From NCBI GenBank assembly GCA_051294905.1, contig CM119376.1, positions 29,016,001-29,080,000 of the forward strand: a stretch of DNA of 64,000 bases, in the 5' to 3' direction. The position numbers were made by a program, and so were the translations under genes. How positions within the stretch are numbered: the stretch's first letter is position 1; every line of letters begins with the position of its first letter. The notes below the pieces were generated by a model, which made no database searches, had not been told where the DNA came from, and saw only the letters and a program-made list of their open reading frames with translations. Shown piece by piece: positions 26,587 through 31,176 of the stretch. The DNA comes from Botryllus schlosseri (Eukaryota).

Positions 26587-29500
26587 TTACCGTGAACGCT
26601 CCGATGCACTTCCTCTGGGGCTTGGAGTTCTTTGTGGAAAATTGTCCCGCACTGGTGATGGGGATCTTGATAGTCGTCTGAAACAGTAATAATAATCATG
26701 CACAATCAGGGGTGGTCCGAATAATCATTCGTTAGTAATCATCCAGTAGTAGTGATTTCAAATTCTACGTGTAGTTTTGCCTATAAAAAGTCAAGTAGAA
26801 GTAGTAAAAACCATAATCGCTTCAGTAGATCCCTAATCCTTGATTTAGAGGCAACATTTTGCCACTATTTGCCTGTCCTGGAAGCTCAGTCTTGATTTGA
26901 AGGCAACATTTTCGTATTATGTACCAGGTACATTGTACTTATCTTAGAGGCTAAAACTGTGGTTTGTAACAGGGGTTCACGGAGCCAGTTGAAGGGGTCT
27001 GCGTGAGATCAAGAACCACCGTCCTAGAACGCTAAATTATAAAAGGAACCCACCTTTCCGGAGTTCTGCTACGCGCCGCCCTTCCGTTTTGCGGCGAATG
27101 ATAGCTCGGCCTGCGCCTTTCCCTCTCGGCGGTTCCCCCTCGTCTGGGAGAGAACGACCTGCTCCTGGACCTCCTGTACTGGCGGCGGGGCGGGCTGTGC
27201 CGTCTCTCCGGGGTGCGGCTGCGCGACCGGCTGTAGCTCCTGCGTCTGCGCGGGCTGCGACTTAACGAGCGTCTTCTCGGGCTGCGGCTGTACGACCTTC
27301 GGCGATATCTCCTGAACGTATGCTTCAAAGTTGCAAATCAGGTACCGGCGATAACAAAATACACACTCACCTTGGCGGGGATCCTCGTTCTTTACCACGC
27401 ATCTGGTTCGGCGCTACAAAAACAAGATACGCACGCTAGTAATCAGAGTCTGTCAAAATAATCCGCGTCGACACTCAAGTAGGCCTGGAAGTAATGCGCT
27501 AAATTTACATCCAATTTGAAGTAAAATAGCTATTCTGAAGACATGTCCAAACTATTTCGAGTGGAATTAGCAAATGAAGGTATGAAAAGTAATGAAGAGC
27601 ACAGTACCAGTCAGCAAAAAAACCTTTACATCAAAAGTCTGCAAAAGTTCATAAGCTTATCGTTCCCTACAGAGACATCGATTGTCATCACAGCCACAAC
27701 GCTCATAGTACGTTATAAGCCACTGTATGACTAGAATTTACTGCGACACCATTTCTCAGCGTGCCTAACGCTGCTTTACAGCTTCATGAATAGCAAGGTC
27801 TGTGAAATCGCAATACTTTTCATTTTCACAACATTTTGACGGTTGGAACTGGATTGGTGGCTACGCGAATGGTGATGATGGAAGAAAAACATGTCTTGTC
27901 TTTGTTGGAGAAGGGCGGTTTCTATCATAAGTGATGCAAGCCAATCTCAAAACTACTTTAAATTTGCAGAATGGTAGGCGCAAAAAGTAAATAGATTTGC
28001 TTAAAAGACTATTAAGTACAAGTGGAATAACCTTAACACAAAATCTCTCAAATTAGTGCAGGCAAGTGGGAAAAATCTACACGATTACTCTAAAAAGTAC
28101 TGTTACTGACAACCTCGATTACTAATTCTAGTTATCACCAGGGTTGTAACCAAGTCACAAGTCAATCTCAGATTTATAGATTCGACTCGACTATTTTCAA
28201 TTCACCACGGAGTCGAGTCGTCTAGTACAGGGTCGAGTCCGAGTCAGTGTGTTGACTCGAGTCTGAGTCCAAGTCATTACGTTTACTGTTCAGTTCAGTT
28301 CAACCCACTGTTTTCAACTCTGCTCGAGTGATAAAGAATGACTTGCATTTATAATATAGTAATTTTCCTCAGTTTCTGGCTCTACTTTCAAGTATCAGGA
28401 CTAAATACCAATAATGTGGTAACTTCACTATTCCCAGAAGTTACAATGAAATTACGTCTTGGTCGTCCTAGTCTCGAGTCCTATGACTTGGTTCAAGTCG
28501 ATACAAAAATCGCGACTCGAGACATTACAACCCTAGTTTCCACATAATTATTATACTTACTTTTTCTGTCTCCGGCAGCAAACTGGACCTCTATGCTTCG
28601 TCCTCCGACCCACTTTCTATCCATACCATAGAGAGCGTCCTCGGCGTCACGAACGTCTTCGAATGTACGATCCAGATAGCCGGCTAAGGATAATCTGCTC
28701 AAACCGGATTCTAGCTACGGGATTTCAGGAAACGACGAAAAGGGCAAAGGAGAGAGGGGTCGGAAAAGAATAAAAACTAAATAACTCTCGACATATCGAG
28801 AGCGAAAACAGATCCGTGCCAACTTCATACCGAGCTTTAGTTAGCCACAGAAAGACATGTAGTCGAAGCCTTTAACTTTGCAAAAACTCTTTCCGCAATC
28901 TTTGCTCTTTCTTTTACTTTAGCAACTCCTCTTTACACTTTAACCTCTTAACTTTGTGCGCTTTAACTTTTAATCGCTTTATCTTTAAAGTCTTTGCCTT
29001 CAAAGATGGGAATTCGGTTCAAATTTTACATTCAAATAACTCGTTCTCGAGTGCTGCGTGCATAAAGTAAGATATTTTTTCGTGCCAATCATGCTGTGCT
29101 CGGGAAAAATCACTAACACTCATTACGGCGCCAGAACAGTATGAAAGATGTGGAACGTTCAAATATGTACCATTTATGCAACCACACAGAATATAATATC
29201 AGTTTTACACCAGATAAGGGTAATTTGATATTTTTGAAACAGCTATTTCCAAACACTTTGTGGCAATGCTGCGGATCTAATGCTGCTTTCTAATACATAA
29301 TTCATATGCTGCGATTGACCAATCGAGATTTCAAGGCATCCACAGTGGAAATAGCACCGAAACTAGGATTTTTGTTGATACCTTCAAGAAATATACATAT
29401 AATCAAACCTTGGTTTACTGGATATCTGCTAGAAAGATATACCAGTTTCTGTTATCATTGCTTCAGTTTTTAAAGCAATATGCACCTGAAAGCGTAATTT

Positions 29501-31176
29501 TGAATGGCCAAAGAGATCATTTATCTACATCATCAAAACTCACAACACTAGTCATGTGATTGGCACGAAAAATGATGTATCAAATTGATATCCTCACCAA
29601 AAACACTTTATTATCTTTGCAAACCGCCACTACGTTGGACTTTTGGCTTTGTCCTCGAAACCAATTATTGCATACAAACGGCTAAGAAGCATTTTAGGCT
29701 TGGAATCTTTGCTTTTTCCAAAGCTTTCCCTTTTATCTAAGACGATACAACAAGTCAAATAACGAAATGCACATTTTGAAAAGGATATTGTATGTAGGCG
29801 AAGCCGCGTGGGGCTCGCGTGTAATAATCAAGCGGGACATACACGTCGCTGACTGGGCCATATCTCGTGAATTCTCGGCGAAGATCTTCAGATCTGAACA
29901 ATAAAAAAACTTGGCGATGCACAGCAAGGTTGCATTTTGCTCTACACTTCGTGTCAACTTTGCAAACCTTCACATTCTTAGTGTTAAATGCATACTGGGA
30001 CACAAGTTCTTTTCAGTACTGATGGCAAAGAACCAGCAACCCATACTGGAAACAGTGGTTGCGTTCGGCGATAAGTTGCGTGGCAGATGGGTCTCTTGCA
30101 GGTTGCCAGTGAATTCGGCCCTCCGAGAATATTGTATTAAAATATATTACCTACCGTTAACATGAATTAATTACATAATTATACTATTAAGTGATTTGGA
30201 TGTCAGGGTATGCGTAGATCGTGTAATCGCGGGAGATAGCGCAGATATTCACGGGGCCGAATTCACCGATGGCTGAATTTACTCGGCAGATTCGGCCCTC
30301 GGAGAATTTAGTACAAAAATATATTACCAACTATCAATGTGAATTAATTACATAATTATATTATTATCAAGTGATTTGGAGGTTAGGGGTTAGGATTAGG
30401 GTTTGGAAGGGTTAGGGTTAAGGTTAGGTAATGTTATTGTAACTGTAATTGTTACCCCGGCCCTGGCCGAATTTACAGAGGGCCGAGGTGACCTGTGGCC
30501 GAATTTACTGGAAACCCTGGAAACAGTGGTTGCGTTTGGCAGTAAATTGCGTGGCACTGGCAGATCGTTCTCTTGCATAGTATAATTAAATAAACGTGAT
30601 GGCCCGAGTGATGTTACCAAAAATTCCACTCTGGCCAACAGCTATGTGAAATTGGACCTGTAGGACTTATATCTATGGGTCCGGTTGAAAGCTCGTCATT
30701 CTTGACAGTTGATAGGCCTATAAGTTAGTTTTGTTATGAAGATATTTTGGAATGATTTCAAATCAAATTTTGCAGTCATCCTGATTAGAAATTGGACAAA
30801 TTGACTGATAAAAGATAGAGCCAAAACACAGACCATCACCTGTTTGGGTACTATGACAACATAATTGTGTAACACCATTTCACTGCATCACTGGAAATAC
30901 AGACAAATCGTTATAACCTTGACTTAACAAGGTTTCAATAATAATGTCCTACTTGGCACATTTCGATTCGCAGACACGACATACCGCGTATTTACATTAC
31001 ATGCCTCGAAATCTACTGCGAACGTCGTAACAACGTAGATTTTGGTGTTGCGCATGAAATGTTGTATTCGCATGATATAACCGGTACAGTAACTAATAGT
31101 TTCGACTTCATGCTTACCTGACAGTTTCGCTGATATTACGAATGAACAGCGACACGTTTGGTCGTCCTCTCGACAT
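26587..31176 (-). CDS. SRSF10: SRSF10/SRSF12-like SR splicing factor (RRM + RS domain), 6 exons, ~219 aa
   Basis: Exons 31118-31176, 29789-29893, 28561-28664, 27371-27413, 27054-27311, 26587-26677 total 660 nt in frame: [20 protein letters not shown]|[35 protein letters not shown]|[34 protein letters not shown]|TPNQMRGKE...RS/RSP repeats. This is close to the vertebrate SRSF10 RRM ([46 protein letters not shown]...DRKTPNQM). The last exon and stop are less certain. Confidence 0.92.
28139..28535 (+). mobile_element. GACTCGAGTC-family hAT MITE in SRSF10 intron 3
   Basis: TIR CAGGGTTGTAA / TTACAACCCTA; TSD gttatcac / gtttccac. Further partial copies at ~48030-48110, 52992-53310 and 59570-59717. 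Confidence 0.8.
28665..29788 (-). other. U12-type (minor spliceosome) AT-AC intron, intron 2 of the SRSF10-like gene
   Basis: 5' end CA|ATATCCTTTT matches the U12 donor consensus. Branch-like TCCTTAGC at 28683-28690. 3' end ..CGTAC|A. Splicing at these sites restores FAYIQ|FEDVRD in frame. Confidence 0.9.
30040..30590. repeat. Composite repeat with duplicated segments and a TTAGGG-like tract in SRSF10 intron 1
   Basis: Direct repeats at 30050-30200, 30290-30380 and 30520-30580; GAATTCGGCC/GGCCGAATT inverted motifs; gttaggggttaggattagggtttggaagggttagggttaaggttagg at 30381-30428. Confidence 0.6.

What the first reader, a model, noticed from the sequence alone, without database searches (positions are those of the whole stretch)
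28714..29843. U2-type poison cassette with 15 AAAG repeats inside the U12 intron of SRSF10: candidate minor-spliceosome sensor and autoregulation circuit
Seen in sequence (minus strand), inside the AT-AC intron: a U2 acceptor (tttgaag|, exon start 28997); a ~130-nt block with 15 AAAG motifs (28868-28997, starting AAAGAC); a GT donor (ctcg|gtatga, exon end 28831); a long polypyrimidine tract with tandem AGs (cccgtag|ctag|, 28714/28710) about 50 nt upstream of the AC acceptor. Exon 2 also holds a strong internal U2 donor (gacgt|gtatgt, 29843). Splicing that donor to the cassette reads GTG CAA AGA CTT TAA, an immediate stop. Established: mammalian SRSF10 has a minor intron at this position, competing major/minor splice sites, and a GA-rich unproductive exon it binds itself; its reported binding consensus is AAAGAC-like. 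Inference: this invertebrate gene carries the same design with non-alignable sequence, so the circuit would be ancient or convergent.
Basis: partly seen in the sequence, partly recalled or inferred. Interest (0 to 1): 0.85.

Follow-up and report, generated by a model that had tools for sequence, protein, structure and literature searches.

The report
SRSF10 minor-intron switch in a tunicate
A sea-squirt copy of the splicing-factor gene SRSF10 has an ordinary intron nested inside its rare "minor" intron and flanked by AAAG-rich stretches, which is the layout mammals use to tie SRSF10 levels to the minor spliceosome, so that circuit looks much older than vertebrates.

Summary
The minus strand carries a tunicate SRSF10 ortholog (7 coding exons, 231 aa).

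**Confirmed by RNA data**
- The AT-AC intron (29788-28665) is spliced.
It opens directly onto the AAAG block: 15 AAAG in 130 nt, against a window mean of 0.8, with no other copy in the window.

**Corrected**
- The partner donor is not the exon-2 GT at 29843. It is TTG|GTGAGG at 29598, 191 nt downstream of the minor 5' splice site.
- A 600-nt GT-AG intron therefore lies nested in the AT-AC intron. This is the upstream-minor, downstream-major layout of mammalian Srsf10.
- The retained 191 nt carry an in-frame stop and a second AAAG cluster.

**Not supported**
- No read or contig uses the GT at 28831 or the AGs at 28714/28710.

**In relatives**
- AAAG clusters beyond 1000 shuffles recur in this intron in Styela, Ciona, Clavelina and a gar. 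A crinoid has an AAAGAC array.
- A GGTGAG donor recurs in Styela, Ciona and the gar.

SRSF10 binding, feedback, NMD and minor-spliceosome sensing are inferred, not shown.

**Verdict:** real. It is the known mammalian circuit extended to tunicates, but the cassette model is half wrong. Scan note s1-258723 covers the same intron on this same stretch.

The parts
29789..29893 (-). SRSF10 coding exon 2 (RRM, through RNP1 ...RGFAYI-Q)
   Evidence: Translation is 82% identical to vertebrate SRSF10 exon 2. The exon 1 junction appears as loose ends at 29897.
28665..29788 (-). U12-type AT-AC intron, 1124 nt: ATATCCTTT donor at 29788-29780, TCCTTAG branch site at 28690-28684, ...GTAC| acceptor
   Evidence: Junction skipping 1124 nt: 37 reads from 29 starts in X21, contig depth 211 in X1. 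Motifs. Same codon position in 8 other loci.
29598..29788 (-). Extension of exon 2, retained when the downstream major donor is used. Has an in-frame TGA at 29757-29755 and the proximal AAAG cluster (8 AAAG, 29733-29609)
   Evidence: X1 contig 29738-29597 at depth 50.5, against 16.9 for the intron just downstream. X21 depth is 2.6-6 here and 0 in the next 350 nt. Stop codon. AAAG count.
29591..29600 (-). U2-type donor TTG|GTGAGG (exon end 29598, GT at 29597-29596)
   Evidence: GT..AG junction 29598>28997: X1 contig depth 25.6, X21 2 reads from 1 start. Best-scoring GT in exon 2 plus 330 nt. GGTGAG block shared with Styela, Ciona and gar.
28998..29597 (-). 600-nt GT-AG intron nested inside the AT-AC intron. 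Holds a dispersed repeat at about 29100-29266
   Evidence: Joint 'skips 600, CT..AC (cut +1)' on the plus strand. Repeat copies elsewhere in the window.
28998..29010 (-). U2-type acceptor cccatctttgaag| (alternative exon starts at 28997)
   Evidence: Same junction as above. Sequence.
28868..28997 (-). AAAG block: 15 AAAG in 130 nt, mostly (T)AAAG(A/T). Candidate exonic splicing enhancer at the very start of the alternative exon
   Evidence: Window maximum. 0 of 1000 shuffles reach it. No other copy in the window. Same 5-mers top the clusters of three other tunicates and the gar exon 3. Held by contigs of at least 10 RNA-labelled runs from 4 studies.
28665..28867 (-). Rest of the AT-AC intron downstream of the block. 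No evidence that these sites are spliced
   Evidence: X1 contig 28998-28635 is unbranched at depth 61.5. No joint is listed at 28831, 28714 or 28710 in any of 4 runs. The pyrimidine tract is absent in Styela, Ciona and Clavelina.
29836..29847 (-). Lies in the codons for D-V-Y-V and is not supported as a donor
   Evidence: No junction. Crude donor score below 1.5, against 3.3 for 29598 and 2.4-8.1 for the gene's constitutive donors.
28561..28664 (-). SRSF10 coding exon 3 (second half of the RRM, ...QFAAGDRK)
   Evidence: Translation. Junction to exon 4 (27413): 27 reads in X21, 9 in X23, contig depth 188.5 in X1.
29607..29612 (-). AATAAA hexamer 10 nt upstream of the major donor, followed by the GU-rich GTGTTTTTGGTG. 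A possible intronic poly(A) signal, untested
   Evidence: No poly(A) ends were listed.

Best explanation
The AAAG block is the enhancer-like start of an alternative, non-productive exon of a tunicate SRSF10 gene.

Two spliceosomes compete on one stretch of pre-mRNA:
- The minor spliceosome removes the whole AT-AC intron (29788-28665) and gives the coding mRNA.
- The major spliceosome instead removes a 600-nt GT-AG intron nested inside it (donor 29598, acceptor 28997).

The major-spliceosome choice keeps 191 nt after exon 2, with a TGA 11 codons in. It also keeps the AAAG-rich sequence downstream. The message then encodes only a truncated half-RRM, and its stop lies 157 nt upstream of an exon junction, so it should be open to nonsense-mediated decay.

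The two AAAG clusters sit on the exonic side of each U2 splice site. I infer that they are bound by SRSF10 itself, whose reported motifs are AAAGACAAA and AGAGAV. More SRSF10 would then push splicing toward the dead-end form (negative feedback), while more minor-spliceosome activity would push it toward the coding form.

Shown: both junctions in RNA, the stop codon, the motif enrichment, and its recurrence in relatives.
Inferred: who binds the motifs, the feedback, the decay, and the sensing of minor-spliceosome activity.
For: - Gene identity: exon 2 is 82% identical to vertebrate SRSF10. The full protein is 53-57% identical to fish SRSF10. The closest protein is Styela clava SRSF10-like, 86.5% over the RRM.
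- RNA: AT-AC junction (X21 37 reads, X1 depth 211). Nested GT-AG junction 29598>28997 (X1 contig depth 25.6, one molecule in X21 from a different study).
- RNA depth in X1: extension of exon 2 at 50.5 and the block region at 61.5, against 17-24 for the middle of the intron and 4 or less for the non-repeat part of neighbouring U2 intron 3.
- AAAG clusters: 15 and 8 per 130 nt are the two highest on the minus strand of the window, and both flank the nested intron.
- Shuffle test: 0 of 1000 shuffles reach the observed value in the window, Styela (14), Clavelina (9), Ciona (9) and gar (10).
- Donor: GGTGAG is the best GT downstream of the minor donor in the window (+192), Styela (+288), Ciona (+241) and gar (+118).
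- Unbiased strand-asymmetry count over nine such introns: AAAG is the top 4-mer (189 sense, 71 antisense) and AAAGAC scores 30 against 5.
- The exact AAAGACAAA occurs in Styela, Clavelina and Ciona.
- Mammalian precedent and motifs: PMC7244321, PMC8522700.
Against: - The nested junction rests on one short contig of a run whose RNA label is only guessed, plus one molecule in X21.
- X21, X23 and X24 show almost no depth over the block. They come from a strain about 4% different even in exons, and the only read-laying run used a 95% cut-off.
- The window's own block has a single AAAGAC and no full AAAGACAAA.
- There are no binding or perturbation data for any tunicate.
- Both AT-AC splice sites survive removal of the nested intron. 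The 'dead-end' RNA could therefore still be spliced to the coding form.
- No poly(A) site like that of mammalian exon 3 was found in 28997-28665 (only ATTAAA at 28974).
- One relative (L010) lacks the AAAG cluster. L010 and L011 have CAAG-rich sequence instead.
Confidence: 0.6

Rival explanations
1. The nested GT-AG splice is a productive intermediate. Removing 600 nt first shortens the AT-AC intron to 524 nt. The minor spliceosome then removes the rest, so the AAAG arrays would help SRSF10 expression rather than throttle it.
For: Both U12 splice sites and the branch site lie outside the nested intron and stay in the RNA. In X1 the contig from 28998 runs unbranched into coding exon 3. No poly(A) signal like the mammalian one lies in 28997-28665.
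Against: In mammals the same layout yields a non-coding isoform that SRSF10 itself promotes (PMC7244321). Once spliced, the AT donor lies inside a defined exon. The steady-state depth of the extension (50.5) and the block (61.5) is a quarter of exon depth in X1, which is high for a transient intermediate.
Confidence: 0.12
2. The layout works as a major/minor splice-site switch, but the AAAG and CAAG arrays are read by another purine-motif protein (for example a Tra2-like factor or another SR protein). There is then regulation but no autoregulation.
For: The window block has only one AAAGAC. The commonest unit is (T)TAAAG(A/T), not the SELEX 9-mer. Two relatives use CAAG-rich sequence at the same place.
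Against: The RRM is 75-79% identical to vertebrate SRSF10. The gar exon 3 region, which corresponds by position to the mammalian exon 3 that carries the SRSF10-dependent enhancer, has the same top 5-mers, AAAGA and TAAAG. The exact AAAGACAAA is in three tunicates.
Confidence: 0.15
3. A 167-nt poison exon (28997-28831) is spliced from the exon-2-internal GT at 29843 and on to the AGs at 28714/28710.
For: All four motifs exist. The pyrimidine tract before 28714 is long, which is unusual for a U12 intron. X1 depth over the block (61.5) slightly exceeds the nested junction plus unspliced RNA (25.6 + 24.1), so another route into 28997 is possible.
Against: None of these junctions appears in any of four runs. 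The X1 contig crosses 28831 and 28714 without a branch. The 29843 GT scores poorly and sits in conserved codons. The pyrimidine tract is not conserved in three other tunicates.
Confidence: 0.05
4. The AAAG block is a decayed simple repeat with no function, and the nested junction is splicing noise.
For: Spacing between AAAG copies is irregular (4-14 nt) and the units are short. The crinoid cluster is an obvious tandem array.
Against: Sense-strand AAAG clusters recur in the same intron of otherwise non-alignable loci in 7 of 8 tested. They are the locus maximum each time. They abut RNA-verified or strong splice sites. TRF finds no array in the window.
Confidence: 0.05

Closest known systems
Mammalian Srsf10 autoregulated minor intron (Meinke et al. 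2020, eLife, PMC7244321)
   Same: - Orthologous gene, with the AT-AC intron at the same codon.
- Minor 5' splice site upstream and a GGTGAG-type major 5' splice site downstream in an extended exon 2 that carries a stop.
- The major 3' splice site inside the minor intron opens onto a purine-rich element resembling the SRSF10 consensus.
- Both routes are seen in RNA.
   Different: - The stop lies 157 nt before the junction (under 50 nt in mammals), so classical NMD is expected here.
- No poly(A) site or internal minor 5' splice site was found in the alternative exon.
- In the available contig the alternative exon runs on into the next coding exon.
- A second AAAG cluster sits in the exon 2 extension.
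- The intron sequence is not alignable with vertebrates.
- No functional test has been done.
U2-in-U12 'twintrons', e.g. Drosophila prospero intron 2 (Scamborova et al. 2004, cited in PMC3564746)
   Same: A GT-AG intron nested within an AT-AC intron, with the two spliceosomes competing. From my own recollection of the 2004 paper, a purine-rich element influences the choice.
   Different: In prospero both products are coding isoforms. Here the U2 route is non-coding. SRSF10 is not in the vertebrate twintron list of PMC3564746.
Poison-exon / unproductive splicing of other SR genes (Lareau et al. 2007; Lareau and Brenner 2015, PMC4379411)
   Same: An SR-protein gene with an alternative, stop-containing splice form in a conserved position. 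The regulation is conserved while the sequence changes.
   Different: The other cases use the major spliceosome only and are true cassettes. SRSF10 is not treated in PMC4379411.

Membership tests
SRSF10-type minor/major splice-site competition module (PMC7244321) | The host gene is an SRSF10/12 ortholog | tested here: met
   Exon 2 is 82% identical to bird SRSF10. Full length is 53-57% identical to fish SRSF10. Nearest proteins are tunicate SRSF10/12-like. The GDRKTPNQM linker is present.
SRSF10-type minor/major splice-site competition module (PMC7244321) | An AT-AC U12 intron splits the RRM after RNP1 and is spliced | tested here: met
   ATATCCTTT...TCCTTAG...AC. Junction reads and contig.
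SRSF10-type minor/major splice-site competition module (PMC7244321) | The minor 5' splice site is upstream and a used major 5' splice site is downstream. The extension carries a stop | tested here: met
   Donor at 29598 is used. TGA at 29757-29755.
SRSF10-type minor/major splice-site competition module (PMC7244321) | A major 3' splice site inside the minor intron defines an alternative non-coding exon | tested here: met
   Acceptor at 28997 is used.
SRSF10-type minor/major splice-site competition module (PMC7244321) | A purine-rich enhancer near the start of the alternative exon that matches the SRSF10 consensus | tested here: inconclusive
   15 AAAG from the first base of the exon, including AAAGAC at nt 3-8. 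The full AAAGACAAA is absent here but present in three other tunicates. Enhancer activity was not testable.
SRSF10-type minor/major splice-site competition module (PMC7244321) | SRSF10 protein promotes the major route (negative feedback), and minor-spliceosome level shifts the ratio | not testable with these tools
   Needs knock-down, over-expression or a minigene.
SRSF10-type minor/major splice-site competition module (PMC7244321) | A dominant poly(A) site and a rarely used minor 5' splice site in the alternative exon | tested here: not met
   No AATAAA in 28997-28665, only ATTAAA at 28974. No second RTATCC motif. The X1 contig continues into exon 3. Clavelina does have a second ATATCCTTT at intron +558.
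Classical poison cassette exon | Both the 3' and the 5' splice site of the cassette are used, so the exon is inserted between constitutive exons | tested here: not met
   The acceptor is used. No junction from 28831 in 4 runs, and the contig is unbranched across it.
U2-in-U12 twintron | GT-AG sites nested inside AT-AC sites, with both pairs used in vivo | tested here: met
   Joints skipping 1124 nt (AT..AC) and 600 nt (GT..AG).

The most novel reading that the evidence does not exclude
The SRSF10 switch dates back at least to the last common ancestor of deuterostomes, and perhaps of bilaterians. The switch comprises a minor donor, a downstream GGTGAG major donor, a nested U2 intron, and an array of short (A/C)AAG motifs read by the protein itself. 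It has been kept by motif turnover without alignable sequence. It may also be the reason this minor intron survives in tunicates, which have lost much of their minor-intron set.
Probability: 0.45. Interest if true: 0.7.

Novelty: new member of a known kind. Interest (0 to 1): 0.55.

Why it matters
In mammals this circuit couples the level of an SR protein, and through it many major-intron splicing choices, to the activity of the minor spliceosome.

- **Age of the circuit.** The same topology with RNA support in a tunicate, and its sequence hallmarks in three more tunicates, a gar, a crinoid and probably an annelid, would make it an old feature of animal gene regulation rather than a vertebrate invention.
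- **A system to test it.** It offers a small, experimentally tractable system, such as Ciona electroporation with introns of 0.6-1.1 kb, to test how the two spliceosomes compete.
- **Mode of conservation.** It is a clean example of regulation conserved by motif density rather than by alignable sequence.

Tried and rejected
- **Dispersed repeat?** The block has no second copy in the window. Only an unrelated piece of the intron (about 29100-29266) is repeated. A phage-database search was irrelevant and empty.
- **Tandem repeat?** TRF finds nothing in the intron.
No junctions and a poor donor score.
- **Finding the window's own protein or closer relatives.** Three homology searches were swamped by vertebrates and gave only Styela, Ciona, Clavelina and Phallusia. 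The spliced 231-aa protein has no reference, so it was never used as a query. I searched with exon pieces by reference and with database proteins.
- **Look-ups that led nowhere.** P0130 and P0124 gave intron-less contigs. P0269 and P0147 were not on record.
- **Whole-intron alignment between tunicates.** Only the U12 donor, the GGTGAG block and short AAAG motifs match.
- **Literature.** No paper in the searchable library describes this circuit outside vertebrates. This is a limit of the library, not proof of absence.
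Full report
**What is in the sequence**

On the minus strand the window holds a seven-exon gene encoding a 231-aa protein with an N-terminal RRM and an RS tail.
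- Exons: E1 31176-31118, E2 29893-29789, E3 28664-28561, E4 27413-27371, E5 27311-27054, E6 26677-26591, and E7 from 26525.
- The intron between E2 and E3 starts ATATCCTTT, has a TCCTTAG branch motif 20 nt from its end, and ends in AC.

**Gene and organism**

- The 34 residues encoded by exon 2 are 82% identical to bird and mammal SRSF10.
- The whole protein is 53-57% identical to fish SRSF10.
- The nearest proteins are tunicate SRSF10/12-like: Styela clava 86.5% over the RRM, Ciona 79%, Phallusia 76%, Clavelina 75%.
- The window therefore comes from an ascidian closer to Styela than to Ciona. This is inferred from protein similarity only.

**RNA evidence**

- *AT-AC junction (29789>28664).* 37 reads from 29 starts in X21, and a contig of depth 211 in X1.
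- *E3>E4 junction.* Seen in X21, X23 and X1.
- *A third junction.* It skips 600 nt with GT..AG ends, from 29598 to 28997. It is carried by an X1 contig of depth 25.6 and by two reads (one start) in X21, which is from another study. Its donor, TTG|GTGAGG, lies 191 nt downstream of the minor donor.
- *X1 contig depths fit this.* Exon 2 is at 211, the extension 29738-29597 at 50.5, the middle of the intron at 17-24, and 28998-28635 at 61.5. The non-repeat part of the neighbouring U2 intron 3 is at 4 or less.
- *X21 agrees in part.* The extension is covered at 2.6-6 and the next 350 nt at 0.

**What is not supported**

- No junction from 29843, none from 28831, and none into 28714 or 28710 in any run.
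- The X1 contig crosses those sites without a branch.
- The 29843 GT lies in the D-V-Y-V codons and scores below 1.5 on a crude donor matrix. The donor at 29598 scores 3.3 and the gene's constitutive donors score 2.4-8.1.
- The long pyrimidine tract before 28714 is not found in the other tunicates.

**Limits of the RNA evidence**

- X1 is only guessed to be RNA, although its spliced contigs show that it is.
- Contig depth is a flat mean over each contig.
- X21, X23 and X24 differ from the reference at about 4 sites per 100 even in exon 3. At the 95% cut-off their intronic reads were probably lost.
- The block is held by contigs of at least ten RNA-labelled runs from four studies. This shows that it is transcribed and persists, not how it is spliced.

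**Is the AAAG block more than chance?**

- 15 AAAG in 130 nt is the maximum of the 64-kb window on either strand. The mean is 0.7-0.8.
- The runner-up on the minus strand, 8, lies in the exon 2 extension, just upstream of the GT donor.
- None of 1000 dinucleotide shuffles of the intron reaches 15.
- TRF finds no array, and the block has no other copy in the window.

**Relatives**

I fetched the orthologous loci of Clavelina lepadiformis (L001/L002), Styela clava (L003), Ciona intestinalis (L004), a gar (L005), the crinoid Antedon (L006) and two metagenomic eukaryote contigs (L009, L010). I also fetched a scaffold of assembly GCA_000328365.1 (L011). From memory, unverified, this is the annelid Capitella teleta.

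- *Intron position.* All have an ATATCC... intron at the same codon with a CCTTAA-type branch site.
- *AAAG clusters.* The highest sense-strand AAAG count per 130 nt lies inside this intron in 7 of the 8 loci tested by shuffling (window, L001, L003-L006, L009, L010). It beats all or nearly all shuffles:

| Locus | Max AAAG per 130 nt | Shuffles reaching it (of 1000) |
|---|---|---|
| Window | 15 | 0 |
| Styela | 14 | 0 |
| Clavelina | 9, in two separate clusters | 0 |
| Ciona | 9 | 0 |
| Gar | 10 | 0 |
| Antedon | 8 | 1 |
| L009 | 8 | 2 |
| L010 | 3 | 610 |

- *L011.* It was not put through the shuffle test. It has 4 AAAG per 130 nt against a background of 0.6, and is CAAG-rich instead.
- *Positive control.* In the gar the cluster follows a strong acceptor. 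By position this is the counterpart of mammalian exon 3, the exon shown to carry the SRSF10-dependent enhancer (PMC7244321).
- *Downstream donor.* A GGTGAG donor follows the minor donor at +192 (window), +288 (Styela), +241 (Ciona), +118 (gar) and +25 (L011). The block GTGTTTT(T)GGTGAG(G)ATATCA is shared by the window and Styela.
- *Alignment.* Otherwise the introns do not align.
- *Unbiased k-mer count.* Over the nine introns (window, L001, L003-L006, L009-L011), AAAG is the most strand-asymmetric 4-mer (189 against 71), TAAAG and AAAGA the top 5-mers, and AAAGAC scores 30 against 5. CAAG ranks third and dominates in L010 and L011.
- *SELEX motif.* The exact 9-mer AAAGACAAA (Shin and Manley 2002, as cited in PMC8522700) occurs in Styela, Clavelina and Ciona but not in the window.

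**Mechanism**

- *Shown.* Two mutually nested splicing choices exist in vivo. The U2 choice keeps a stop codon (TGA 29757-29755) 157 nt upstream of the new junction.
- *Inferred from the mammalian work.* SRSF10 binds the AAAG arrays on the exonic side of both U2 sites and promotes the U2 route, lowering its own output. The minor spliceosome competes for the same RNA, so SRSF10 output tracks its activity.
- *Rivals.*
  - The nested splice may be a productive intermediate, because the AT-AC sites survive it.
  - Another purine-motif protein may read the arrays.
  - The block may be neutral repeat decay, which conservation makes unlikely.

**Comparison with what is known**

- The layout matches Meinke et al. 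2020 point by point: upstream minor donor, downstream major donor with a stop in the extension, and an internal major acceptor followed by a purine-rich element.
- It differs in three ways. It lacks the exon 3 poly(A) site and the internal minor donor. Its stop is far enough from the junction for classical NMD. It has a second motif cluster in the extension.
- It also fits the definition of a U2-in-U12 twintron (PMC3564746).
- I found no report of this circuit outside vertebrates in the searchable library. Lareau and Brenner 2015 do not treat SRSF10.
[quoted passage not shown] That makes retention of this intron in four ascidians noteworthy.

**Verdict**

This is a real feature and a new member of a known kind. 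The cassette's upstream donor and its 3' end are wrong or unsupported. Function remains inferred.

Noticed in passing
window 29607-29612 (minus strand): A canonical AATAAA sits 10 nt upstream of the RNA-supported GT donor and is followed by GU-rich GTGTTTTTGGTG. This could be an intronic poly(A) site kept in check by U1 binding. In X21 depth falls from 6 to 2.6 to 0 across this point.
   Followed up: partly
window 28062-28506: This part of SRSF10 intron 3 has very high contig depth in run X1 (829-2493, against about 200 for exons). It is rich in GACTCGAGTC-like palindromic motifs and is probably an expressed dispersed repeat.
   Followed up: no
window 29100-29266: A piece of the nested intron is a dispersed repeat with weaker copies at 1767-1939, 54823-54883 and 60571-60609.
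   Followed up: partly
window 30381-30428: A degenerate telomere-like hexamer array (GGTTAG units on the plus strand, about 8 copies) lies inside SRSF10 intron 1.
   Followed up: no
L001:5927-5935 (Clavelina, intron +558): A second perfect ATATCCTTT lies downstream of the distal AAAG cluster, about 70 nt before the AC acceptor. It resembles the rarely used minor 5' splice site of mammalian Srsf10 exon 3.
   Followed up: no
L004:4698-4706 (Ciona, intron +788): A strong GAG|GTGAGT donor-like site lies 34 nt before the AC acceptor, right next to the U12 branch site. A strong acceptor (ctctctacag|) lies only 63 nt after the minor donor, directly before the AAAG cluster. L009 has the same early acceptor.
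   Followed up: no
L004:1-775 (Ciona): A gene about 2.2 kb upstream of Ciona SRSF10/12, with another called gene between them, encodes a protein with a zf-U11-48K (PF05253) domain. That domain occurs in the minor-spliceosome protein U11-48K but also in unrelated proteins.
   Followed up: no
L006: about 6186-6526 (Antedon, intron +2950 to +3290): A tandem array of about 12 units of 26 nt, each carrying AAAGAC, lies inside the AT-AC intron of the crinoid SRSF10/12-like gene.
   Followed up: partly
protein library hits (listed): Dozens of separate 50%-identity clusters are short ORFs reading ...PRGFAY(V/I)-Q-YP(F/L/S)..., which is read-through of an ATATCC donor after the same codon. The minor intron at this position is very widespread.
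   Followed up: partly
window 28598-28652 and 27379-27394: The 2026 RNA runs carry several fixed differences from the reference within coding exons 3 and 4 (about 4 per 100 nt in X21). These samples are a markedly different strain or population.
   Followed up: no
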